Assembly: GCF_001194135.2 (NCBI RefSeq) | Contig: NC_068993.1 | Location: 43,819,024-43,868,850 of the forward strand | Reading direction: 5' to 3' | Length of the DNA: 49,827 bases | Source: Octopus bimaculoides | Taxonomy: Eukaryota | Shown: positions 3,565-49,827 of the stretch, piece by piece | Layout: each line of letters starts with the position of its first letter | How positions within the stretch are numbered: position 1 is the stretch's first letter | Translations under genes and position numbers: made by a program | Notes under the pieces: model-generated | What the model saw: the letters and a program-made list of their open reading frames with translations, nothing else | Database searches by the model: none | What the model was told of the DNA's origin: nothing

Positions 3565-29392
<25,828 letters not shown>

Positions 29393-33130: not shown

Positions 33131-33177
33131 GTGAGTGTAAGAAAAACGACGAGATGGTCATTGTTGGAATGTGTTTA

Positions 33178-33574
33178 GTGGCTGTGTGGTAAGTAGCTTG
33201 CCTTCCAACCACATGGTTCCGGGTTCAGTCTCACTGCGTGGCACCTTGGGCAAGTGTCTTCTACTATAGCCTCGGGCCGACCAAAGCCTTGTGAGTGGAT
33301 TTGGTAGACGGAAACTGAAAGAAGCCCGTCGTATATATGTATATATATATGTATGTGTGTATATGTTGTGTATCTGTGTTTGTCTCCCCAACATCGCTTG
33401 ACAACCGATGCTGGTGTGTTTAGGTCCCAGTAATCTGGCGGTTCGGCAAAAAGAGACCGATAGAATAAGTACTAGGCTCACAATGAATAAGCCTTGGGGT
33501 CGATTTTCTCGACTAAAGGCGGTGCTCCAGCATGGCCGCAGTCAAATGACTGAAACAAGTAAAAGAAAGAAAGA
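33178..33574 (+). mobile_element. tRNA-derived SINE, family A, near full length and CpG-rich
   Basis: A-box-like tggctgtgtggt, B-box-like ggttcagtc; decayed copies at ~232-430(-), 4690-5070, 13420-13565(-), 18985-19385, 21420-21825, 22240-22570, 28380-28650(-), 35820-36310, 39020-39480, 48230-48345(-). Confidence 0.75.
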
Positions 33575-33798: not shown

Positions 33799-34030
33799 GT
33801 AAGAAGCGACGAAATATTTATCTCCCGATCTTATTTCGCCATTTTCTTTACACTATACAATATTTTCATACAAGCATATTTTGAAGAATATTTTATATGA
33901 CCTCTATCTTCAACTTATGTGGGAAATATTCACTGGAAGTGCTGTATGTGCGCTTATCTACCTATACATACATAAATACATATTTTCAATGCCTATATAC
34001 TGGCAAAACGCTGCTCTTCTAAATAGAAAC

Positions 34031-34211
34031 CTTACCTGTCATTGTGGTTTTGTGGAACGAAGCAAAGCAGGTCTTACCGTCCTTTCACGAAAACACAGTA
34101 AATGATCCCCAAGCACTCAAGCAAACTGAGTTCTCAACTTGTTCCATTTGTCAAAAGGTTTGCAAGGCACCAGCAGACCTCAAGAGACACATTCGTGTAA
34201 ATAAAACATGA
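34031..34211 (+). pseudogene. Frameshifted pair of degenerate C2H2 zinc fingers, probably a LINE (RTE-like) 3' end
   Basis: LTCHCGFVERSKAGLTVLSRKH then, after a 1-nt shift, TCSICQKVCKAPADLKRHIRVNK*. Confidence 0.5.
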
Positions 34212-37200
34212 TTAACCCATAAGGCGTTGGGATTTGCACTCATATAGCATGGACTTCTGAGCACATTTTATGAAAATGAGACTACCATGCACACATAAAA
34301 AACAAAAAAATAGTTAAAATATCTTCTTAGTATATAATGATGGCAAGTTTTACATTATCTGAAAAGTCATTAGTTTTACTATTAGTCCTCTTGCATTCTG
34401 TGGGGTATCAGAGCGTTTGAGTAACATTAGACCCCAACAAACGTCCATAAATTAAATGCATCTATCTGGGCCACGATCGTGGCCCGTCGCGCTTTATTTT
34501 ACCGAACCCTCATTTGTCGTTCACTACAAGAAAATCCATCACACACACATACACACTGTGTGTGTGTGTGTTTAGACAGATAAATATCATTTTATGTTCT
34601 TTATGCTAGCATGAGTTGCACAGGTTACAGTCCAATTAAGTTCTTATTCTGAGTTTACACACAGAGAGGCACACTATATTATTATTGTTGTCTGACTGGG
34701 TTGCACCTGATTGCTCTTTTTCTTCTTTTTAGCAATTGACATTTTGCTGAAAAGGGTAACCATTGGGAGTACTGTTGGGAAGGAAAAGAGAAAGGCTTAG
34801 TGATTTGGTCTTTGCATGAATGCCAGAATACAAAGGAGCCAAGAAAGGTATGTAGTGTGTATGGAAAATGACATGTTAAAAAAAAACGTACAGAATGGTG
34901 AAAGTGGACACAGCCTGTGGAAGAGGGTGTCAGAAGACAGAGGATGAAGTGATGAAGACTGATCTCTGGATGCAGAATCTCATAGAGGAGATGACAAAGG
35001 ACTGAGCTGATAGGCAACATGCAATTCTGGAGAAGAACCATTCACCAGAGCATGCATGGGGAAATAAGTGTTAAACTGAGTACATATCTCCTCTTAGGTC
35101 TCTTGCCCAGTATATCCCCGTCAAGTGCACATCTGCAGCATTCCCCGAGTCTTTGACTCTCATTCATCTCTCTATGACCCTTTCTCTACTCACATTCCTT
35201 TCTATTTGTTGTACTATGCTCCTCATGAAAATAGGAATGACAATAGAGCTGTCAAACCTCATCTCCCTGACAATGATCTGTCTCTTTACATTCTCCTCTA
35301 CAGCACCTTGGGCTCAGTGGTTTACTGTTATACTGTATAATTCAGATTGTTTGGATGCTCTCCCACTGTTGTGAATGTAGTGGGCTTGATGTCAGTGAAC
35401 TCACTGTCACTTATACCTCACTGAACATAGATTACTACAACATTGCTATTCTATAAAATTCCACACTAGCTCTGGGTTATCAGAACTGAAAAATTATGCT
35501 GACTGTCAGTCATCATGGCATGAAAGATATTGCTGTCCAAGAATTAGCACTTTTATGTTAACATACACACTTCACATACCTGATACCATGATCCACATCA
35601 ATGGCATAGGTATTTCTACCTGCACAATTCAGCTGTTTATCAGAATATGAAACAAATTTCCAGATACTACTGTTGGGAGCATTTCAGCTGAAAGAATACA
35701 AAACATTCAGGAATCTGGTGCACAAACAATTCCAGCATCATACTCCCTAAAAATGCAGTGAAACATTGATTGGTTCACCAGCCCACATTTTAAAATCAAA
35801 TGTCCAGTGATGTTTATATAAAGGTACAAGCTTGGCTCAGTGGTAAAAAGTTTGTTTCCCAACCATTTGGCTTCAGGTTTAATCCTAGTGCATGGCATCA
35901 GGGTTGGTAGTGTGCATGTGTGACTGTGATGAAAAGTTGCTTCCTAACCACATAATTTCGTTTGGGTTCAGTGGCAAGTTGGACAAGTGTCTTCTATCAT
36001 TGCCCTGAACCAAACAGGTCTTGTGAGTGGATTTGCTAGAGAAACTGAAAGAAGCCTGTTGTGTGCATGTGTGTGTATGTATTACTGTCTCTTTACTTTG
36101 ACATCAATTGATAGTTGTGAGCAAGTGTCACTATTATACAAGTTGTGTGCTTTGTTTCCAATCTTCCCAGAAAACATGTCTGACCTGAGGGAAATACCAC
36201 TTTGCTTGGAAACAGATGAGTGTTGGTGACAGGAAAGGAATCTGGTTATAGAAAACCCACTTCAAATTCTGTTTGGCCTATGTGAATATGGAAAAGGGGA
36301 CAGCAAAATGATGATAGATATATTGAATTATTGATTGATTGATTGACTGATAAATAGATAGATATGCATGTGTGTATAATTATTTATATTTCCTCTTTTT
36401 TTTGTAAATTTCTGAGCTACAAGCAGTGACATGTCATTTTCTTGTTAACAAATATCATCCACTAGCTTTCAAAGACATGTAGAATAAGAGATCTCTCACA
36501 TAAACAAAAGGTAAGGGTTAGCAGTAGGAGGGATATCCAGCTGTAAAATAATATCTCAATAATATATTTGTCTAACCCTTGCTAGCAAAGAAAAATAGAT
36601 GTAAAAAATGAATGAACACACTATAGAATTCCTATTTATTCCCTTTCTACATATTGAACATGGCTACTTCCCAGTTAGTAGTAGTTTCCTGTTTTTTTTT
36701 TCTACAAACAAATAGTTTCATATTTGCTAAATTGACCTTTTGGCCTATTAATCCTTTGACTTTATTTCTGCATAAGAAACTTATCATCTTATTCTTCAAC
36801 AGATTCAGCAATGAAAATTCGATTGTCATTACACATGAGTTTCATAGGCTGCATGTTTTTGGCTCTTTTGTCATGGCCTAGAGAACTGTAATAGACAGGA
36901 GTGGGAAGAGAGAGAACTGAGCCTTGATAAACTCTTATCTACATGCTAAATTTCTTACAAACTCTCACTTTGCTGACTACCCCCCCCNNNNNNNNNNNNN
37001 NNNNNNNNNNNNNNNNNNNNNNNNNNNNNNNNNNNNNNNNNNNNNNNNNNNNNNNNNNNNNNNNNNNNNNNNNNNNNNNNNNNNNNNNNNNNNNNNNNTC
37101 CCCCACTCTCACCCCACTCATCCCTCTTAGGATCTTTTCAAGGAGTTCTGGACATGACCACTCTTTCTTCTTTTCCCTTCTGAATTTTGTATCAAGGACT

Positions 37201-37539
37201 ACATCATCCAATGTGCCCTTCTCTTTTTTTAAAAGCATGACAGTAGGATTTAAGGAAGATTTGGTTGCTATTTCATTTCTAGCAGGTCAGTTGACCATGT
37301 AGAGGCCCCCATTGACTCAAACACTGTTTACACTATGTATTATTGACAGAGATGAATTATCTGTTTTATCTTTATTGTTCTATTAAAACAAAATGAGAAA
37401 AAAATTTAATTCTTTACTTCCAGATTTACTTTTTGTTGTGGAAAGGTTGCTTGCTGAGAAGGCTACATCGAAAGAACATTGTCAAATTTCTCCCTCTTCC
37501 TCTCATTTTATTGACGTCTGATTCTGACCAAGGAACAAG

Positions 37540-37806
37540 ATGTCTTTTGACTTTGATAGCAAAAAACTTGACAGCGACAAAGAACTGCAAGCAGCATTGC
37601 AACAGGAGCAGGCAAAGGCACAATTCCAGAGTCAGATTCATAAACTGACCGATATCTGTTGGGACACTTGCTTAGATAAACCACGTGATAAGATGGACAG
37701 TCGTACAGAGACTTGCATCTCAAACTGCGTCGATCGATTCATAGACACATCTTTGCTAGTGGCCAGTCGCTTTCAACAAATTCTACAAAGAGCTGCATCA
37801 CAGTAA
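37540..37806 (+). CDS. TIMM8: Mitochondrial import inner membrane translocase subunit Tim8 (TIMM8B-like), 88 aa
   Basis: Twin CX3C motifs (CWDTC, CISNC), DKP...DSRTETC, CVDRFIDTSL; upstream acceptor tttacttccag at 37423; AATAAA at 37985. Confidence 0.95.
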   Translation: MSFDFDSKKLDSDKELQAALQQEQAKAQFQSQIHKLTDICWDTCLDKPRDKMDSRTETCISNCVDRFIDTSLLVASRFQQILQRAASQ

Positions 37807-39481
37807 TGCTTTATATAATGTCTTAGATATTCATGCACAAATGATATAATACAAAACTCTTTGTGTGTGTGTTTTTGTTGTTTTTTTCTAGAAGTTAAAA
37901 AAAAATTGAATGTGTTTTGACACATCAAATAGGTGGGTTTTTTTTAAATTTTATTTTTGGTAGTCTTTTTTTTACCATTCCAAAAATAAAGAATTCCCAA
38001 GAACTTTTATTAGATTTCATCATCTAACTACCATGCAGTTTTTTTTTTTCTTTTATTCTTATTTTATTTTGTTTCATTTCATTTCATACAATAATTTCTA
38101 ATATTGGCATAAAGCCACATGGGAAAGGCTGCAATTAGATTACCTGCAGTATGTGACTGGTATATTATTTTTTCGACCCCAGGAAGAATGAAGAGCAGAA
38201 TCAATCTCAGTAGGATTTGAGCTTAGAACATAACATAAAAGAATAAATATCACAAGGCATTTAATCTATCACTCTACTGATTTTGCTATTGGAGTGGATA
38301 TTACAAAATGGTCCCGGGTCCCTCCACCCACAGAATGATATGATTCACCTTACTGTAAATTCTTTCTACTATAGGCACAAGGCTAGCCAATTACATTGAC
38401 TCCTGTGCTCAACTGGTACTTATTTTATCAACCCTGAAAGGATGAGAGTCAAAGTCTACTTTGATGTAATGAGAACTCAGAACATGTAGACAGATGAAAT
38501 GTCACTAAGCATTTTGTTCATTGTGCTAATGTTTCTACCAGCTCACTGCATTACACCTTAATTTAAACTGGTACTACAGTGGTACAATCTAGCTATTTAT
38601 ATACTACTATAGTATGATCCATTTTGCTGTAAATTGGTATCACAGAATAATACAGTCAAGCTATGTATCTGATAGATTGGTACAATTCAGTGGGATCATT
38701 GTAAAAATAACTGCTGCTGTTTATCCTCATAACATCCCTAAGATCTAGATGCTCCCGCCATGACTATCTGTTTTTTATTCAGCTATTGTATATCTTGATT
38801 ATATGGCAGGGTATGATTTGAGAGAGATCAGTTACTATTTCTATTAGTGCTGAGTAACCACACTGAGTAGTGATTCCTCGTCTTTTCTATGCCTTATTCT
38901 AGGAAATGTTTGATTAGTTTTTGCATCTACAAAAGTATTATCACATTTAAAGATGAAAATAGTTTTTTTTTTTTTTTAGTTGAACCACATTCAATGATTC
39001 AGTTTAATGCAAAAGAATGGTTTTTGTGGGTCAGTTCATTTTGCAGCTATGTAGTTCTGAGTTCAGTCACAGTACATGGCACCTTTGGCAAGTGTCTTCT
39101 ACTGTAGCCTTAAGTTGACCAAAAGCCTTGTAAGTGAATTTGGTAGACAAAAACTGAAAAAGAAGCTTGTTTTACATATATAGGCATGGCTCTATGGTTC
39201 TGTTCATTTTGCAGCCATGTGGTTTTAAGTCCAATCCCATTACATGGCATCTTTGGCAAGTGTCTTCTGTAGCCTCAAGCTGACCAAAACCTTGAGTGAA
39301 TTTGGTACATGTAAACTGAAAAAGAAGCCTGTTGTACATATATGTGTCACCTTGTCTAGACATCATGCACCACTATCATATAACCACTGATGTTTATTTA
39401 TGTTCTATGGAATCATATCCAGACTAGGGGAAAATATTACCTTGAAAACGGGTAATGATTGGCAACAGGAAGAGCATTTGG

Positions 39482-39860
39482 TCATAAAAAAGAGCATCTT
39501 TGTTCCTGCTTCTCATTCATGACTTTATCAAAACTTGGAACTTTTGTGCTGATTATAATTTGTAGGACTAGTGAATTCATATAATTCCTAAATTTTGTCT
39601 TCATTGACAAAAGAAAATTGAATCCAGAGTCATGCAAAGACAAGGTGCATTCCAGAATTTTGAGACTTTTACTGGAGAGACTATTTATTTCAAAGAAGTA
39701 CAAAACTAATTTCCTTCAAAGTAGGATAATCTGACTTCAATGCGCTTCTTGTATTGCTCCAGTCATTTCATGAAGGCCCTCTAAAGTGGTGTCCAGGACC
39801 TTTGTCACAGCTTCCTTCATCTTCAGCTGTAGATGTCTTGCTATAAACAAGACTCATGGC
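39482..39860 (-). mobile_element. hAT (Charlie/Buster-like) transposase C-terminal remnant
   Basis: SLSSKSLKIL...DSGFNFLLSMKTKFRN...PSFDKVMNEKQEQ resembles the hAT dimerization domain. Confidence 0.5.
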
Positions 39861-40209
39861 ATTCCTGCATTATATGAGTGGTGGGGAGATGGTTATGATG
39901 AGGTGTCACACACAAAATCACAAAATCTAAGATGCATTGAACTAATTCGTATGTATATTGTGTGCTCCGAAAGTTTAAAGATCTACAATTATTACACAAG
40001 TAAATACAGTAACATACAAACGTTCTAAAATGTAGCTAAAAACTGTAAGACACCTATTGTAACATCATCATCATCATTTAACATCCTTTTCCATGTTGGC
40101 ATGGATTATATGGTTTGACAAGGGCTATGCAAAGTTCTCTTGTCTGCTTTGGTATGGTTTCTATAGCTGGATACCTGCATGGACAAGCATTACCAAAGGT
40201 GATTTTTAG

Positions 40210-40482
40210 GATATCAATTATTCTGTGCTGGACCAGTCTTCTTGAGTACAGCAAAACACCAGTCATCTCAGTCCTTTGTCATTTCCTCTGTAAGGCTCAG
40301 TGTCTTGAGATTGGCCTTCAATATTTCATCCCATGTCTTCCTGGGTCTCCTTCTTCCACTATTTCTATCCACCTTAATTGATTGGTACTTCTTTATGCAC
40401 CCGCCTACCACAACAACTGATGTCCTGAAACCACCTTGGTAAAGCTTGCCCATGAGAGGCTCTACCTTGTCAATCTTCTTCC
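40210..40482 (-). mobile_element. RTE LINE 3' fragment
   Basis: GRRRPRKTWDEILKANLKTLSLTEEMTKD, typical RTE ORF C-terminus. Confidence 0.7.
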
Positions 40483-41096
40483 NNNNNNNNNNCAAGGCCA
40501 CATTTCATCTCCTGACATCCAAAAAGCACTGGTGTTGGTACCAAGTAAAAAAGAACTGGTGTTGATGCTGTGTAAAAGCACCTAGTACATTCTGTAAAGT
40601 AGTTGGCATTAGGAAATGCATCCAGTTGTAGAAACCATGCCAAAACAGGCATGGAGCCTGGGCAGCTTTTCAGTTGGCCAGCTCCTGTCAAACCGTCCAG
40701 CCCATGCTAGCATGGAAAACGGGCATTAAGTGATGATGATAATGATGATTTTCCCCAGGATTTATGACCATTTTCAAACTTCTGCAAAGTAATTTCTGCA
40801 TTTTCATGGTGGTGGTGGTGGTGGGGATTCTTTCATCCTCCAGGTTTTCCTTTTCCTAGTTAAGTTTATTTTCGTTTTCTTTTTCTTTGTATCGGAATAG
40901 CTCTTATTTTCAAGTCCCTCCACGGTAATCTATATTGAGTAGTACATTTTTCACGTGGGAAAAAACTCTCTCTCTCTCTCACACACGCACACACAATTTT
41001 TACTAATCCATACAAGTAGTAGTATAAAAAAAATAAAATAAGTTGAAAATGCACTGAGAGTGTATAAGATTTATATTAATACTAATATAAATCTTA

Positions 41097-41305
41097 AGGC
41101 GGTGAACGGGCAGAATAGTTAGCAATCCTAGCAAAACGCTTAACACCATCTGTCCGTCTTTACATTCTGGGTTCAAATTCCGCCAAGGTCGACTTATTCT
41201 TTTGGGATTGATAAAATAAGTACTAGTTGAACGCTGGGGTTGATGTAATCGACTTATTCCCTTCTCCCAAATTGCTGGCCTTGTGCCAGAATTTGAAACC
41301 AATAT
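41097..41305 (+). mobile_element. tRNA-derived SINE, family C, CpG-rich copy
   Basis: ggcggtgaacgggcagaa...gggttcaaattcc (B box)...gggattgataaaataagtact; decayed copies ~6278-6735 (tandem pair), 8055-8535 (pair), 23134-23270, 23415-23610, 38100-38545(-), 41360-41460(-). Confidence 0.7.
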
Positions 41306-43714
41306 TAAAGTAAATCTAATGCACTCTCAACAACGTTTATGATATATATATATATATATTCTTTTCTACTCTAGGCACAAGGCCCGAAATATTTTAGGGA
41401 GGGGGCCAGTCGATTAGATAGACCCTAGTACGCAACTGGTACTTAATTTATAGACCCCGATATATATATATATATATATATATGTCCTAGCATGGCCGTA
41501 GTAACTAAAATAAGTCAAAGACTATATACACACATAATATGTGTGTGCACGCTTGTACGTATAATTTAATGGAAATAGTTTATCGTTATAAACTCTAGGT
41601 TTAACAAGCAGAAATTAAGGAATAATGACTCCATATTATTGATAAACGTGAACATATTCTGCAGCTACCAACCTATATGCCTATTTTCGATTTNNNNNNN
41701 NNNNNNNNNNNNNNNNNNNNNNNNNNNNNNNNNNNNNNNNNNNNNNNNNNNNNNNNNNNNNNNNNNNNNNNNNNNNNNNNNNNNNNNNNNNNNNNTATAT
41801 ATATATATATCACAGAGTTAAATAACTTCGTGGCCGTCCTAAACGGATAGACAGATCGCACGAGTGCTACAGAAGGCATGCTGGGTAACAATCCTAGTTT
41901 TCATTTTCACTTTTAATCACGAAACACTAAATCCAAAACAAAATGAGAAAAGCTGAAATTGATGGTGAGTGTATATATATTTATTTGAAATGTAATCCAA
42001 ATTTTAACGCTACCCAATATGTATGTGTGTTAGTGTTTACATTTATATATATAAACACGTTTACACACTTTAAGTAACACCGGACAGATATAAGTTTTGC
42101 TTAAGGACTTCTAAGTTCTGTTTTCAAAACTAAATAAAGAACAGAGGTTTGTTCGATCTTTGTGAAATAACAGCCAATTCTCTCAAATCAGATCCTACCG
42201 TCTTAAAACAAAGGAAGCGGGATTTTAATAATGTAGTCCCTAATATTGTAGTACAAAATCTAGGATGGTCGTAACGAGCACGCCTATGTTTACATAGGCT
42301 CAATCACTAGGCTGTTCTGGGTTGCATCGGAACAACAATAAAGGAAAATTTGATAATTAAATGACGGAGAAGCACGTTTTCCATAACTTACGTTAGGTAT
42401 TTTGTATCTTCAGACTGGATTATCACACGGGGACGGAGCTAAGTATCAGTTTCGCACAATTTATCGGAAGTATTAAAGTTTTGTAATTTGTAATATTTTA
42501 GATACTTCTGTGTCTATAATATGTATACTTGTAAGTATACACTGCAAAATAAATATTGGTAAGTGGGTTTGAGATTTTGTCTATATATCTATTTACTTGC
42601 TTAACTGCTTTTTTTTTCTGTTTCGCCTCTACTCATATTCTTTTTCCATTATTCTCTCTCTCCATGTAGACAAATATCTTTGCACATAGATACACCATCT
42701 CCCTCCAAGTACAATGTCTTTACCATATTATTTTAACGAAAATATTATTGAAATTGAAACTGTAAATACACCAAGATGCGAACTTTTTGTTAAAGGGTGG
42801 AGGTTTATTGTTCCGAACACCTCATGTTACAAAGTACAGTAGCGCAGGAACACGCACATGTATACACACACCTTGTTTGCATATACTGTACTACTCTGAC
42901 TTCGTCAAACTTCATTCGCTATCAGTTTGTTTGGCAACCGTAGAATTTTTTTTTCCTTGACACTATGCTGTGGCCAATTATTTACCTGTCTTAAGGATAT
43001 TTTTGGTATAATTAAGGTTTGACTCTGCGTTGTTTTTAAGGGACGGGATTGTGTGTTTAAAGGGAGATTTGATGGTGGTTTCTATCGAATTGTCCGAACA
43101 GAGGTTTCTAACAACACAAAACAGGTCGTTACATTATACCTCAACTTAAATTTTTTCGACTTTTTAATTTTTTTAAAAAGAAATTAATGGAAAAATAATA
43201 AAAAATAAAACTCAACGTCACCCGATTTATTCTAGTTTATGTTGGTTTTTGCGAACATATTTAAAACCATAAAATCTTTAAGAAAAAAAAAACACACCTA
43301 AAATCAATACCGAAGTAGAAAATTAAACAGAATATGGGGAAATACGTACAAATCATTTATTAAAACAGATAAAAGCTTATAAATTTCTTTTAAAATGTTC
43401 ACAGTTATGGCTTTACGGGACCAAATAGTTCCAGCATTTCACCGCGAGGGAACGGTGTAGTACGTAGCAGGAAATTCAAATGTTAGGTTTGTGTTTGTTG
43501 TGTATTGATGTTCGTCCTTGATGTTTATGAAGATGATCACATCAGCAACAGTACTCCTTGTGGGTCCTGAGGTGGCATATTAGGTTTATACTGGCATTAA
43601 AATCCACAGTTATAGTAGAGACACGTAATAACAGAATCAGGACCCGGTGGAACTCTTGTTTTCCGTGTAGCCGTCTAATGTGTAAAAACTTGTGCTTTTT
43701 TTTTTACATATATT

Positions 43715-44581
43715 ATGCCCCGCAAGAAAGCTCCTGCTAAATCTAGTCCTGGTGGTCCTAAGCGCCATGCTATTTCTTTGGAGTATAAATTGGCAATGAT
43801 TAAACGTTATGAAAAAGGTGAACGAATGGTAGCGATAGCGCGTGCTTATGGCTTAAGTCGAACGACCGTATCTACAATTATTCATGACAAGGAAAGGATT
43901 TTAACTCATATCCAAGAGACTGCTCCCGGGATGAAGAGTACCGTAATCACCAAGAAAAGAGGTAAAATCATCCAAGAAATGGAACACCTTCTTTCCTTTT
44001 GGCTCGAACGGCAGACTCGTCAGCGCAACCCCATAAACCAGATGATAATTCAAGAGAAAGCGCTTTCATTGTTCAAAGACCTTAAGAAGAAGTATCCTGA
44101 CAATGCAACAGAGGATTTTAAGGCCAGTTCAGGATGGTTTATGCGATTCAAGCAGCGACACAATCTTTATAACGTTAAGGTCCAAGGCGAAAGTACATCG
44201 GCAGTAACTGATGCTGAAAAGCAACCGCTCACAAATGAGGAGCTGATGAAACTCCACGAACAGCAACAACAAGAGGAGGCCCAGCAACCGGAACCAGAAC
44301 TTAGGCACTTCACCATCAACAAAATGCAGCAAGCTTTTGTATATATGGAGAAATCACTAACCCTCTTCGAGGAGATGGATCCTAATGCTGAGCGCTTTGC
44401 TAAAATTATGGGAGCTGTTCACGACGCTTATGTTCCTTATAGGGTTATCCTGGAAGACATGAAGAGTAAAACCATTCAAGGTACTCTAGAGAAGTTATTA
44501 CTATACGTTGAAAGTCGACGGTCTGAATTGGAAACGTCTGATGATAAACCGATTCCTTCAACTTCAATGTCAACTCCATAA
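43715..44581 (+). CDS. pogo/Tigger (TIGD/CENP-B family) transposase-derived protein lacking the DDE domain, 288 aa
   Basis: Uninterrupted ORF; CENP-B-type N-terminal HTH (KRHAISLEYKLAMIKRYEKG...SRTTVSTIIHDKERI), Tc5-type HTH (EMEHLLSFWL...FKASSGWFMRFKQRH), GESTSA, then directly QPLTNEELM and the Tigger-type C-terminal helical tail; no DET/DNA/PMD catalytic motifs. Confidence 0.85.
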   Translation: MPRKKAPAKSSPGGPKRHAISLEYKLAMIKRYEKGERMVAIARAYGLSRTTVSTIIHDKERILTHIQETAPGMKSTVITKKRGKIIQEMEHLLSFWLERQTRQRNPINQMIIQEKALSLFKDLKKKYPDNATEDFKASSGWFMRFKQRHNLYNVKVQGESTSAVTDAEKQPLTNEELMKLHEQQQQEEAQQPEPELRHFTINKMQQAFVYMEKSLTLFEEMDPNAERFAKIMGAVHDAYVPYRVILEDMKSKTIQGTLEKLLLYVESRRSELETSDDKPIPSTSMSTP

Positions 44582-44804
44582 TCCACGCTTCTCCAACCTC
44601 CACTTCTGTCTAAATCAAGCTCATCGATATCATCAATCAGGTAAATGTTGCTTTTTTATTTTGTTATTTTTAGGGCTATTTAAAATAAAAATTCTTAACA
44701 TTATCTCTTTGAATCCTTGTTTAAATATTCAAAGTAGAGTATTTTTATAGCGACCGGAAGTCTTTTTTTTTTTACGATTTTCAATGAATTTTAAAATGTT
44801 TTCT

Positions 44805-44883
44805 TTTTTCGTGTTACGTCAGTTTTCAAGTTAGATCACATGTCTTGGAATCTTTTACCGACTTTAGTTGGGGTATACCTGTA
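44805..44883 (+). mobile_element. Right end (subterminal region + TIR + TA) of the pogo-like element
   Basis: ...gtcttggaatcttttaccgactttagttGGGGTATACCTG|TA; reverse complement TA|CAGGTATACCCC resembles pogo/Tigger termini; no matching left TIR seen upstream. Confidence 0.6.
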
Positions 44884-45187
44884 TATTGTGGGTCGGTTTT
44901 TCTACGCTGGTACTGGTTGGACGGGTACTTATTTGAAACTGTATTTTACTGTTGGATGCTCTTGTCGCCAACCCAATAAAGGATTATTTTTAAATCAATA
45001 TTTCGAGTGCAGAGCTATGGGATTTAATGTAATGCTCGCTGAGATTTTGTTTTTCTCAGACGATCCCATCTGATGGAGTGCGCCTATCCCCCGCCCACAG
45101 ATATGTATGCATGCATGTATATATAGATAATTCTATAGAGGTGGAAATTTAGTTTGTTCAAAACAGTAATTTTTTGGGGTGTATGTT

Positions 45188-45411
45188 TTAACCCTCTAGC
45201 ATTCAAATTACTCTGTCAAATGTAATGCTTATTTATTTATATTATTTTGAATTAAACATGCATTATCTCATTGCTTTGAGATTTCGACTATGTGATTGTT
45301 TACTTTTAGAATGATATTGTAGGATTGGTGTGAGAGGCCAGATCTGGCCAGTTTAGATGCAAAACAGAATATTTGGGCTGGATGTGGCCAATTTAAATGC
45401 TAAAGAATTAA
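45188..45411. mobile_element. piggyBac-like MITE
   Basis: TTAA|CCCTCTAGCATT ... AATGCTAAAGAA|TTAA; partial second copy at 47784-47985. Confidence 0.6.
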
Positions 45412-45559
45412 ACATTGGAGATTACGAATCTGCCCTTTTTTCAAAAATCTGTAGTTTTTGCTTTCCACCTACACCTTTCCTTAATTTTTCATGTTTGGAT
45501 CGTTTTTTGAATTTTTTTCAATAATTCTATAATAAAAGTATATTAAATAAGGAAAACAT

Positions 45560-45985
45560 TGGTAATCGAGGTAGTTAGAGTCTGCAATAGAATACTTAAG
45601 ATTAGATTAGTGCTACATTATGGGTTAGCAACCATTATCTCGGCCTATGCCCCTCAGAAAGACCTATCTCATGACACCCTCTTGCTGACGACCTCGTGGA
45701 CGAATGACAAGGACCTTCTCTTTGTGGCTGGTGATTTCATGTTGCACAACATGCAGGAGGCTTCCATGGCATACATGGAGGCTATGGTTTTGGTTCCCGC
45801 AATGAGGAGAGACCCAGGCTGCTGGAGTTCTGCGATGCAAATGATCTTATGGTTTGCAATACTAACTTCAGGAAACCTACCAGTCACCTAGTCACCTACC
45901 GTTCCAGCAGACACACTAGTCAGATTGACTATATCCTCACCAGGAAAAGGGAAAGATGGCTACTTATAAATGCCAAAACCTTAAA
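45560..45985 (+). mobile_element. RTE LINE apurinic endonuclease fragment
   Basis: IISAYAPQ, FVAGDF, GYGFGSRNEE...LLEFCDANDL..NTNFRK..HLVTY...SQIDYIL with frameshifts. Confidence 0.8.
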
Positions 45986-47780: not shown

Positions 47781-49514
47781 TTTCTGTCAAATGTAATACT
47801 TTTTTATTCATATTGTTTTCAATTAATCATGCATTATCTTGCAGCTTGGAGATTTCAGTGTTGTGATTGTTCATTTTTAGAATGACATTGTAGGTATGTT
47901 TGGGAGGCCAGATCTGGCCAGTTTGAATATAAAACAAGTAGAATATTTGGGCTCAATATGGCCAGTTTAAACACTAAAAAGTTAAATTACTGCACTCTTC
48001 CAGATTTAAATTGCTAGTTAATTCAGCATTCTTAATGTTCAAAACCATTTCAAGTGTTTGTCAACACCTTAGGTGGGCACATAGACCCCATCGACTAATG
48101 TAAGTTAGGTACTGATTCTGTTGATCAGATTTTTTGCTGTACTGCTAAATTATGGGGATCAATACAGCACACATCTCCCCTCTCTCTCAGAATTTCTATT
48201 TATGGAAATGTAGTTTTCATTTGTAAGATTCACTCACATGGCATGGGTTAGTTTGTGTTTATAGTAGAATACACTTGCCCAAGGCACTATACATTGGATT
48301 GAACCTGAAGCCATGTGGTTCGGAAGCAAACTTCCTAACCATATAGTCATTCTTGTGCTTACCACTGAGGAAATAACAAAAAATTTCACTTTTTCATGCA
48401 AAATGAAGTATTTCCTTTTTATTTCATCATCATCATCATACAACATCTATTTTCGATGCTGGCTTTTGTTGGGTGGATTGATAGGATCCGAGTTTAGATG
48501 TCTTCCTAATGTCAGCCCTTTCTCAGAGGGTACTGGATGCTTTATTCATGCTGCTGGCACTAGTGAGGTTGCCAAATAACTTGCAAAACAGTAAAAAAAA
48601 AAACAATGGAAAAAGTCCCTTTAACTATGTGGTGGGGTAGGTGATTGGGTTAGTTTTTGAGAAGAGGGGAAAGATGGCTTTATGTCAGGTGTTAGGAGAG
48701 TGAAAGTATGACAGAGGGACAAGAATAGGTGTCTTGCTATAATGAAGATACACAGCTACCCTGCATTATATAAGGGTGGGTGAAAGTGGGCAACATGATG
48801 ATAAGATGGCAGTGATGGGGGTACTGAGGAAGAACAATACCTATAACCAGTTTTCAAGGGATATTAATTGGGAGGAAGGGAGGGAGACCTGGCATGAATG
48901 CTTTCATTAAGATTAATCCCACTGAAGACATCCAAGGGCTTGAAGAAGGAGAGAATCCATAATTGTCATATCTTTTATTCAGACATAATGTATCTAGAAG
49001 TATCTTAAGCATCTTTTGTTTTTGATGACAAGAGAGTAGGGTTTGAGATTTGGTTGCTATTTCTAGCAGGTTAAGTTTTCTCTTAGAGGCTTTTTGTTGT
49101 TGTTGTATTTGTTTACAATAGAGCAATTTTTTTAATTGGAGTTTTGTTTAATTTTGCAGCTATGTTGGTGCTACAAAAACAACAATATTTTCATTGACAA
49201 CAACAAACAGTGCTCTGCATCAGTATTTGTTGATGACGACAACTGCAACAAGAACACAATAAATATTAGCAACAACAACAGCAAGAACAATGACAAAAAA
49301 TAGAAAAAAACGAACTACAACACTGAGTGCAGCAGCTGCAGAAAAGATAATATCAAGTGCAACAACAGCAATCAGGAAATCAGTAGCAACGACTGCAACA
49401 GTTGGAGTTAATAGTACTGATACTAATATTACCACTAATAATATTAATAATAATAATAATAATAATAATAATGATAACCACAACAGCAGCAGCAAGAATA
49501 GAAACAACAGCAAC

Positions 49515-49827
49515 AGTAAGAACAGTAATAACAACAGCAGCAGTAAGAACAGCAACAATAACAGTAGCAGTAAGAACAGCAACAATAACAGCAGCAGTAA
49601 GAACAGCAACAATAACAGTAGCAGTAAGAACAGCAACAATAATACCAGCAGTAAGAACAGTAATAACAACAGCAGCAGTAAGAACAGCAACAATAACAGC
49701 AGTAGTAAGAACAGCAACAATAACAGTAGCAGTAAGAACAGCAACAATAATACCAGCAGTAAGAACAGTAATAACAACAGCAGTAGTAAGAACAGTAATA
49801 ATAACAGCACCAGCAGTAAGAACAGTA
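49515..49827. repeat. 27-bp minisatellite AGTAAGAACAG(C/T)AA(C/T)AA(T/C)AACAG(C/T)AGC, about 11.5 copies, continuing past window end
   Basis: Direct reading; preceded by triplet-derived low-complexity sequence 49200-49514. Confidence 0.92.

What the first reader, a model, noticed from the sequence alone, without database searches (positions are those of the whole stretch)
43715..44581. Intact pogo-derived ORF with an in-frame excision of the entire DDE domain
Seen: 288 uninterrupted codons with two HTH domains, and GESTSA fused at ~44201-44224 to QPLTNEELM plus the C-terminal tail. Known: in Tigger/TIGD1-type transposases roughly 300 aa including the DDD catalytic domain lie between these motifs; CENP-B, JRK and TIGD genes are domesticated pogo transposases; truncated transposases such as the Drosophila KP element repress transposition. 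Inference: a DNA-binding-only protein, either a domesticated cephalopod transcription/chromatin factor or a dominant-negative repressor of its family. Every other TE-derived coding fragment in the window is broken by stops or frameshifts.
Basis: partly seen in the sequence, partly recalled or inferred. Interest (0 to 1): 0.7.

Follow-up and report, generated by a model that had tools for sequence, protein, structure and literature searches.

The report
Octopus gene from a gutted transposase
This is a real octopus gene made from a Tigger/pogo "jumping gene" enzyme that lost its DNA-cutting core but kept its DNA-binding head and its tail; evolution is clearly preserving it, but it is already annotated, already listed in a published catalogue, and has a close precedent in fruit flies.

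Summary
Window 43715-44581 (+) is an intact 288-codon ORF in Octopus bimaculoides. [quoted passage not shown] The protein runs from "GESTSA(VTDAEK)" directly into "QPLTNEEL" and the family's C-terminal tail, and DDE-bearing relatives carry about 277-300 residues between those points.

The ORF lies in a roughly 1.75-kb internally deleted Tigger-like element. The 3' TIR is good (44860-44881, then TA). A decayed 5' TIR is probable at 43130-43150.

An O. sinensis counterpart of the same length sits at a collinear locus. The 30 nucleotide differences include 24 at third codon positions. dN/dS is 0.04-0.10. The ORF has no indels, against about 12 expected from the flanks. An O. vulgaris transcriptome contig encodes the ortholog.

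The best reading is a host-retained, catalytically dead, probably dimeric DNA-binding protein. Whether it acts as a chromatin/transcription factor or as a repressor of its transposon family is unresolved.

It is not new. RefSeq annotates it (LOC106874186), and Mukherjee & Moroz 2023 list this exact protein as a pogo-derived "CENPB" factor. Drosophila CAG is a known DDE-less pogo domesticate made the same way. Interest is low to moderate.

The parts
43715..44581 (+). Intact 288-codon ORF (RefSeq LOC106874186 / XP_014777328.1); a DDE-less Tigger transposase derivative
   Evidence: Against O. sinensis: 30 nt differences, none of them indels, 6 aa differences, dN/dS 0.04-0.10.
43757..43906 (+). 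First helix-turn-helix, CENP-B_N (aa 15-64)
   Evidence: Pfam PF04218, E=1.8e-10. AF2 helices 22-33, 38-45 and 49-69, pLDDT about 86-90. Matches 1hlv.
43976..44173 (+). Second helix-turn-helix, HTH_Tnp_Tc5 (aa 88-153)
   Evidence: Pfam PF03221, E=5e-15. AF2 helices 84-102, 109-126 and 139-148.
44204..44221 (+). Deletion junction (aa 164-169, VTDAEK), where about 277-300 aa including all of DDE_1 are missing
   Evidence: Alignment A1 and tblastn to L003. It lies in a predicted disordered linker, aa 159-170, pLDDT below 50.
44228..44578 (+). C-terminal tail homologous to the post-DDE tail of Tigger transposases; predicted helical hairpin at aa 201-273
   Evidence: 46.8% identity to the L003 tail over 126 aa. 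Alignment. dN/dS 0.034 over aa 161-288. AF2 pLDDT about 80-85.
44477..44500 (+). PIP-box-position motif QGTLEKLL (aa 255-262); Q and L kept, aromatic pair replaced by Leu-Leu
   Evidence: Relatives have Qxx[ILMV]xx[FYW][FYWL] at this position in 24 of 74 tails scanned. PIP consensus and pogo/Tigger PCNA binding: PMC5371812 and PMC4231638.
44860..44881 (-). 3' terminal inverted repeat (CAGGTATACCCCAACTAAAGTC read inward), followed by TA at 44882-44883
   Evidence: 19 of 26 terminal bases (TA included) match the L003 5' TIR. Conserved in O. sinensis.
43130..43150 (+). Probable decayed 5' TIR with TA (TA CA-TTATACCTCAACTTAA); terminal CAGG destroyed
   Evidence: 17 of 21 matches plus one gap to the reverse complement of the 3' TIR. 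P=0.016 in 1.9 kb, and below 0.002 in the 300-bp zone predicted from the L003 5'-UTR alignment. Eroded further in O. sinensis.
42581..43714 (+). 5' UTR of the RefSeq mRNA model; it starts about 550 nt outside the element's 5' end
   Evidence: The first 399 nt of the published cDNA map without gaps to 42581-42979. The rest of the cDNA was cut in the stored file.

Best explanation
A Tigger-family (pogo superfamily) DNA transposon inserted at a TA site before O. bimaculoides and O. sinensis/vulgaris split. An in-frame internal deletion of about 830-900 bp removed the whole DDE_1 catalytic domain. It joined the linker after the second HTH to the linker before the C-terminal tail, and the ancestral start codon was kept. 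The element's ends then decayed, so the copy cannot move.

The host has since kept the 288-aa product under strong purifying selection. The protein cannot cut DNA. It most likely binds a specific DNA sequence through a CENP-B-like bipartite HTH, originally the family's terminal-repeat sequence. It probably pairs with itself or with partners through the constrained C-terminal helical hairpin. That would make it a chromatin or transcription factor.

Shown here: anatomy, orthology, selection and transcription. Inferred: DNA binding, dimerisation and the nuclear regulatory role. Whether it still binds PCNA is doubtful, because the two aromatic residues of the PIP box are now leucines.
For: Anatomy.

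Orthology: window 34000-45563 is collinear with the O. sinensis locus L001 at 85-93% identity.

Selection:
- 30 differences fall 2/4/24 across codon positions 1/2/3, and there are 6 aa changes.
- NG86 gives dN 0.0096, dS 0.142, omega 0.067, binomial p=8e-12.
- LWL85 gives 0.082, YN00 0.098 and ML 0.038.
- None of 20,000 neutral placements of the same 30 substitutions gave 6 or fewer aa changes with no stop.
- There are 41 indel events in 2,899 bp of flank and none in the 867-bp ORF. The expectation was 12.3, P=4.7e-6.
- Both halves are constrained: omega 0.119 for the HTH half and 0.034 for the tail.

Immobility: the terminal CAGG of the 5' TIR is destroyed.

Transcription: the RefSeq cDNA starts at 42581. 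O. vulgaris contig comp46413 encodes aa 89-155 with only synonymous differences from O. sinensis.

Benchmarks: accepted pogo-derived host genes have Ka/Ks of 0.055-0.21 (PMC7386202), and Drosophila cag has 0.195 (PMC13548663).
Against: - No functional data exist. DNA binding, the target sequence, dimerisation and nuclear localisation are all inferred.
- Selection rests on one full-length species pair plus a 201-nt fragment from a third, closely related species.
- No ortholog was found outside the genus Octopus, so the gene may be young.
- Genome-wide copy number could not be measured with these tools.
- The evidence for a host promoter is a computed RefSeq model, of which I could read only 399 nt.
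- dS is about twice the flank divergence, which is unexplained. Even with flank divergence as the neutral yardstick, dN/d(flank) is about 0.17.
Confidence: 0.8

Rival explanations
1. KP-type trans-dominant repressor. The DDE-less protein is kept because it blocks still-active Tigger relatives in octopus genomes, either by occupying their terminal repeats or by poisoning transposase oligomers through the shared C-terminal tail. This overlaps the best explanation, since it is also a host-selected, DNA-binding-only protein. It differs in the target and in the benefit to the host.
For: - The protein keeps exactly the parts a repressor needs: the TIR-binding HTH pair and the family tail, which is the most constrained part (omega 0.034).
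- Related DDE-bearing Tigger sequences are transcribed in O. vulgaris. comp23095 is 41/67 identical over the HTH2 region, and comp59238 carries a full DDE region.
- A 66%-identical DDE-bearing fragment exists in a public read set (P0009).
- Internally deleted copies are the usual by-product of pogo-family activity (PMC4231638).
Against: - No DDE-bearing protein more than 66% identical was found among 5.8 billion proteins. No intact autonomous partner from its own lineage was found in this database, which contains cephalopod proteins (octopus, Argonauta).
- Classical KP-type repressors are encoded by multi-copy mobile elements, whereas this is one fixed, immobile locus.
- No other copy of the family's TIR occurs in the 50-kb window. 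I did not scan the O. sinensis locus L001 for it.
Confidence: 0.2
2. An ordinary non-autonomous internal-deletion copy whose ORF is open by luck, mis-annotated as a gene.
For: - Internal deletions are common in this family: 35 of 44 D. melanogaster pogo copies have one (PMC4231638).
- Similar DDE-less ORFs turn up in a mite, a bee, a fish and monkeys.
- The locus still has recognisable element ends.
Against: - After insertion, orthologous TE copies evolve neutrally. Here 24 of 30 differences are at third positions, omega is 0.04-0.10, and there are no indels against about 12 expected.
- Under neutral placement of the observed substitutions, the chance of keeping the ORF open is 0.23. The chance of 6 or fewer aa changes was 0 in 20,000 trials.
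- The ortholog is transcribed in a third species.
Confidence: 0.03
3. An exon of a larger host gene (for example the upstream AAA-ATPase gene) or a retro-copied spliced transposase mRNA, rather than a stand-alone DNA-level deletion derivative.
For: - AAA-ATPase exons lie on the same strand upstream, for example 24949-25105.
- The junctions of DDE-less relatives cluster in the same two linkers, which could suggest splicing.
Against: - The gene index lists no other gene within 10 kb on either side in either species.
- The ORF keeps the family's own start (MPRKKAP... against MPPKKSP... in L003) and its own stop.
- The 3' TIR and a decayed 5' TIR flank the ORF. A retrocopy would not carry these.
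Confidence: 0.02

Closest known systems
Drosophila CAG (CG12346), a pogo-derived CENP-B-related host gene (Mateo & Gonzalez 2014, PMC4231638)
   Same: Both derive from a pogo-superfamily transposase. [quoted passage not shown]
   Different: This is an independent event in a different phylum and a different pogo lineage (Tigger, not pogoR). It is much younger and still flanked by recognisable element ends. PCNA binding is documented for CAG. In octopus it is untested, and the PIP aromatic residues are lost.
Mammalian CENPBD1, the source of the RefSeq name 'CENPBD1-like'
   Same: [quoted passage not shown]
   Different: Mammalian CENPBD1 is about 540 aa, retains DDE_1 (DD32G) and is restricted to therian mammals. 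The octopus gene is 288 aa, DDE-less and arose separately. The name reflects similarity, not orthology.
CENP-B, and fission-yeast Abp1/Cbh1/Cbh2
   Same: They share the bipartite HTH DNA-binding fold. 1hlv is the best sequence and fold match. They also share a transposase origin.
   Different: CENP-B keeps a DDE_1 relic and has a dedicated CENP-B_dimeris domain. Neither is detectable here. No evidence links the octopus protein to centromeres.
Drosophila P-element KP repressor (truncated transposase)
   Same: Both are internal-deletion products that keep the DNA-binding end and lack catalysis. The comparison rests on established knowledge and was not tested here.
   Different: KP belongs to a different superfamily and is carried by multi-copy mobile elements alongside active P elements. 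The octopus locus is fixed, immobile and conserved between species.
Published catalogue entry Ob_74186 (Mukherjee & Moroz 2023, PMC10027918)
   Same: The protein sequence is identical. It is listed as an O. bimaculoides pogo-derived 'CENPB' transcription factor next to O. vulgaris comp46413.
   Different: In the text and tables I read, the catalogue reports domains and trees. I found no mapping of the DDE deletion or the element ends, and no test of synteny or selection. The paper also says in general that no homologs occur in closest neighbours, whereas this gene has clear congeneric orthologs.

Membership tests
pogo/Tigger transposase-derived protein | N-terminal CENP-B_N plus HTH_Tnp_Tc5 DNA-binding domains | tested here: met
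   Pfam E=1.8e-10 and 5e-15, both above the gathering scores. 3,454 homologs at E<=1e-3, mostly Tigger-like.
pogo/Tigger transposase-derived protein | DDE_1 catalytic domain (DDD triad) | tested here: not met
   No DDE_1 hit at E<=1. The alignment shows the whole domain absent. It is therefore a derivative, not a transposase.
pogo/Tigger transposase-derived protein | Element ends: TA target duplication and CAGG... terminal inverted repeats | tested here: met
   The 3' end is clear. The 5' end is a decayed but statistically supported match (P=0.016 and below 0.002).
pogo/Tigger transposase-derived protein | C-terminal PCNA-interacting (PIP) box Qxx[ILM]xxF[FY] | tested here: inconclusive
   The motif position is conserved, but the sequence is QGTLEKLL, with no aromatic residues, in both octopus species. 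Binding was not testable.
Domesticated (host-co-opted) transposase gene | Orthologous copy at a syntenic locus in other species | tested here: met
   11.5 kb of flanks are collinear with O. sinensis. Shown only within the genus Octopus.
Domesticated (host-co-opted) transposase gene | Purifying selection on the coding sequence | tested here: met
   Omega is 0.038-0.098 by four estimators, and there are no indels.
Domesticated (host-co-opted) transposase gene | Loss of mobility | tested here: met
   There is no catalytic domain, and the terminal bases of the 5' TIR are destroyed in both species.
Domesticated (host-co-opted) transposase gene | Expression | tested here: inconclusive
   An O. vulgaris transcriptome contig and a RefSeq mRNA model exist. 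I could obtain no read-level, tissue or protein data.
Domesticated (host-co-opted) transposase gene | Single copy in the genome | tested here: inconclusive
   Each exact protein is on record at one place. Its 90% cluster has 2 members, one per species. There is no second copy in the window. No whole-genome BLASTN was possible.
Mammalian CENPBD1 ortholog | About 540 aa with DDE_1 retained; therian distribution | tested here: not met
   The octopus protein is 288 aa and has no DDE_1. The CENPBD1 description is from PMC7386202.
CENP-B proper | C-terminal CENP-B_dimeris domain and binding to the centromeric CENP-B box | tested here: not met
   No CENP-B_dimeris hit in Pfam. Centromere binding is not testable here.
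KP-type transposon repressor | Truncated transposase keeping the DNA-binding region, encoded by multi-copy non-autonomous elements alongside active autonomous elements | tested here: inconclusive
   The truncation criterion is met. The locus looks single and immobile. Only distant DDE-bearing relatives (66% identity or less) were found. Repression is not testable.

The most novel reading that the evidence does not exclude
The tail's PIP box has been converted from an aromatic pair to Leu-Leu, and the tail is the most constrained part of the protein. The protein may therefore have been uncoupled from PCNA and replication. It may have been re-purposed as a dimeric, sequence-specific factor that reads dispersed Tigger terminal-repeat relics, wiring an Octopus-specific regulatory or heterochromatin network. 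That would be a young domestication caught while the element ends are still visible.
Probability: 0.12. Interest if true: 0.55.

Novelty: already known. Interest (0 to 1): 0.3.

Why it matters
This is a clean, young example of how a transposase becomes a host gene. One in-frame deletion removes catalysis, and the DNA-binding head and the interaction tail stay under selection. The donor element's ends are still readable, so the starting material, the deletion junction and the transcript start outside the element can all be seen at one locus. That makes it a convenient model for the DNA-binding-only route of domestication in a lineage known for transposon-rich genomes. It does not open a new class. 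The gene is annotated and catalogued, and Drosophila CAG already shows the same route.

Tried and rejected
- The default inverted-repeat search (seed 9) and a first local alignment found no 5' TIR. I first concluded it was absent. A position-informed gapped search later recovered a decayed one.
- Deep orthologs are rejected. Argonauta hians P0008 is 52% identical, is a 177-aa HTH-only product at a different locus, and is not an ortholog. Nautilus comp65748 is only distantly related.
- No protein 60-97% identical exists among 5.8 billion clusters.
- The fold search found nothing informative for the C-terminal tail. Only the CENP-B DNA-binding domain, and then Pax paired domains, matched the HTH region.
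- The spliced-mRNA retrocopy idea is rejected because the TIRs flank the ORF. The idea of an exon of the AAA-ATPase gene is rejected because no other gene is recorded within 10 kb.
- I could not establish microhomology at the deletion junction. The nearest DDE-bearing DNA is only about 68% identical, and a string search for the L003 left breakpoint failed.
- L002 and L004 were returned by look-ups but were not available as files to scripts, so I used the window itself and did not analyse L004 further.

Full report
**Source and observation**

The window is Octopus bimaculoides chromosome CM046613.1 (GCA_001194135.2). The ORF is exactly as described: 43715-44581 on the + strand, ATG start, 288 codons. 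Apart from N-run and low-complexity artefacts, it is the longest ORF in the window.

Pfam finds CENP-B_N (aa 15-64, E=1.8e-10) and HTH_Tnp_Tc5 (aa 88-153, E=5e-15), and no DDE_1 even at E<=1. The crystal structure of the CENP-B DNA-binding domain (1hlv) is the best match both by sequence (5e-10) and by predicted fold (probability 1.00).

**The internal deletion is real**

The closest relatives that keep a catalytic domain match the octopus protein at both ends, with the DDE region in between.
- On an ENA contig (L003), aa 1-163 align to 818-1297 and aa 159-284 align to 2128-2496. That leaves 830 nt, about 277 aa, which carry DDE_1.
- L003 is a complete Tigger-like element of about 3 kb, bounded by TA|CAGGGATAACTC ... 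GAGTTATCCCTG|TA.
- In a 17-sequence alignment the octopus protein passes from GESTSAVTDAE directly to KQPLTNEEL, across about 300 columns. Pfam places DDE_1 inside that span, at aa 222-402 of the full-length relative P0021.

The junction lies at aa 164-169, nt 44204-44221. An AlphaFold2 model (mean pLDDT 69.7) shows two confident HTH modules and a disordered linker exactly at the junction (aa 159-170, pLDDT below 50). A confident C-terminal helical hairpin follows at aa 201-273. The family's own start codon is retained: MPRKKAP... in octopus against MPPKKSP... in L003.

**Element ends**

The 3' end reads TA|CAGGTATACCCCAACTAAAGTC on the minus strand and ends at 44881. Counting the TA, 19 of its 26 terminal bases match the 5' TIR of L003. 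It is conserved in O. sinensis.

My first searches missed a 5' partner. A weak alignment of the upstream region to the L003 5' UTR predicted an end near 43127. At 43130-43150 there is TACA-TTATACCTCAACTTAA, which matches the reverse complement of the 3' TIR at 17 of 21 positions with one gap. This is significant at P=0.016 across the 1.9-kb upstream region and below 0.002 within the predicted 300-bp zone.

The terminal CAGG is destroyed in O. bimaculoides and eroded further in O. sinensis. The locus is therefore an internally deleted Tigger-like element of about 1.75 kb (43132-44881), flanked by TA, that can no longer be mobilised.

**Orthology and selection**

O. sinensis encodes a 288-aa protein that is 98% identical (P0001 = XP_029644134.1). 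Its locus is collinear with window 34000-45563 at 85-93% identity. The insertion and the deletion therefore both predate the species split.

| Measure | ORF | Flanks |
|---|---|---|
| Aligned length | 864 nt (867 nt with the stop for the indel count) | 2,855 aligned bases (2,899 bp) |
| Substitutions | 30 (2/4/24 at codon positions 1/2/3); 6 aa changes | 157 (5.5%) |
| Indel events | 0 (12.3 expected, P=4.7e-6) | 41 |

The dN/dS estimates are 0.067 (NG86, binomial p=8e-12), 0.082 (LWL85), 0.098 (YN00) and 0.038 (ML). Both halves of the protein are constrained: 0.119 for the HTH half and 0.034 for the tail. When the same 30 substitutions were placed neutrally, the ORF stayed open in 23% of trials. 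None of 20,000 trials gave 6 or fewer amino-acid changes.

Orthologous transposon copies evolve neutrally after insertion. This pattern therefore indicates selection at the level of the host. The values fall within or below the range published for accepted pogo-derived host genes, which is 0.055-0.21 (PMC7386202), and for Drosophila cag, 0.195 (PMC13548663).

**Expression**

The exact protein appears in supplementary file 5 of Mukherjee & Moroz 2023 (PMC10027918) as Ob_74186 / XP_014777328.1 / LOC106874186, class CENPB.

The first 399 nt of the cDNA given there map without gaps to window 42581-42979. The modelled transcript therefore starts about 1.1 kb upstream of the ATG and about 550 nt outside the element's 5' end.

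The same table lists an O. vulgaris transcriptome contig, comp46413, that encodes aa 89-155. It differs from O. sinensis by three synonymous changes. It differs from O. bimaculoides by eight changes, seven of them at third codon positions. The ortholog is therefore transcribed in a third species.

**Likely mechanism**

The protein has no catalytic domain, so it cannot cut or join DNA. It keeps the bipartite HTH that pogo-family transposases use to recognise their terminal repeats. It also keeps the post-DDE tail, which is its most constrained part.

In the family, that tail ends in a PIP box (Qxx[ILM]xxF[FY]) at a fixed distance after a conserved YRxIYxEKK motif. Twenty-four of 74 scanned tails have a near-canonical motif. 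Pogo transposase and Drosophila CAG bind PCNA (PMC4231638, PMC5371812). In both octopus species the motif is QGTLEKLL: the Q and the L are kept, and the aromatic pair is replaced by leucines. PCNA binding is therefore doubtful.

I infer a sequence-specific, probably dimeric, nuclear DNA-binding protein. Whether it acts as a chromatin or transcription factor (my preferred reading) or as a repressor of related Tigger elements is unresolved. Related DDE-bearing Tigger transcripts do exist in O. vulgaris (comp23095, comp59238). However, no DDE-bearing protein is more than 66% identical to this one.

**Comparison with known systems**

- **Drosophila CAG** is the closest analogue. It is a pogo-derived host gene that also lost DDE_1 by internal deletion.
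- **Mammalian CENPBD1.** The RefSeq label "CENPBD1-like" reflects similarity only. Mammalian CENPBD1 is about 540 aa, keeps DDE_1 and is confined to therian mammals. Gao et al. state that all 12 vertebrate pogo domesticates retain the DDE domain.
- **CENP-B.** This protein is not CENP-B, because it has no CENP-B_dimeris domain.
- **Phylogenetic reach.** The event is independent and, on present evidence, limited to the genus Octopus. Argonauta and Nautilus relatives are not orthologs.

**Verdict**

The object is not new: it is annotated, it is in a published catalogue of pogo-derived octopus factors, and its mode of origin has a textbook precedent.

This analysis adds:
- the exact deletion junction;
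- both element ends;
- a transcript start that lies outside the element;
- synteny with O. sinensis;
- a strong selection signal;
- the loss of the PIP aromatic residues.

Interest is 0.3.

Noticed in passing
window 43715-44581 compared with 41798-43714 and 44582-45563: Synonymous divergence from O. sinensis (dS 0.10-0.14; 4-fold sites 10.7%) is about twice the substitution divergence of the flanking non-coding DNA (5.5%; Fisher p=0.03). The ORF has 43% GC and the flanks 33%. Possible causes are constraint on the long UTRs, a composition-dependent mutation rate, or estimator bias.
   Followed up: partly
proteins P0027, P0101, P0034, P0017, P0015, P0037, P0046 (alignment A1): DDE-less proteins with the same layout (two HTH domains plus the family tail, about 250-330 aa) recur in a house-dust mite, a bee, Arapaima, colobine monkeys and unnamed samples. 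Their junctions fall in the same two linkers as in octopus. Either independent in-frame deletions are tolerated only there, or some are gene models that splice out a decayed DDE region.
   Followed up: partly
L003:376-3354 (ENA ERZ25072293 contig): A complete Tigger-like element of about 3 kb with perfect 14-nt termini including the TA, and a frameshifted transposase. It is the closest DDE-bearing relative with DNA available (58% aa identity over the HTH part). The source organism was not identified. An O. vulgaris transcript (comp23095) resembles it.
   Followed up: partly
window 24949-25105 (+), and possibly 10138-10758 (+): An exon-like ORF with an AAA ATPase match (PF00004, E=2e-13). A host AAA-ATPase gene lies upstream on the same strand as the Tigger-derived gene.
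   Followed up: partly
window 9566-9952 (-): A 129-aa ORF with a weak match to the zinc-binding region of reverse transcriptases (zf-RVT, E=2.4e-4, below the gathering score); a retroelement fragment.
   Followed up: no
window 45116/45117 compared with L001:11408-11773: O. sinensis carries an extra 363 bp here. L001 11410-11765 matches window 33177-33566, in reverse orientation, at about 85% identity, so the extra segment is a dispersed repeat. Whether it was inserted in O. sinensis or lost in O. bimaculoides was not determined.
   Followed up: no
window 49482-49825: A tandem array of a 27-nt unit (12.7 copies, 87% matches) gives a long artefactual Leu-rich ORF on the minus strand.
   Followed up: no
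protein P0005 (Alligator mississippiensis): A 408-aa protein named 'C7orf50 homolog isoform X1' has a Tigger HTH head, a partly deleted core and the Tigger tail joined to a lysine/serine-rich C-terminus. It may be a transposase-host gene fusion model.
   Followed up: no
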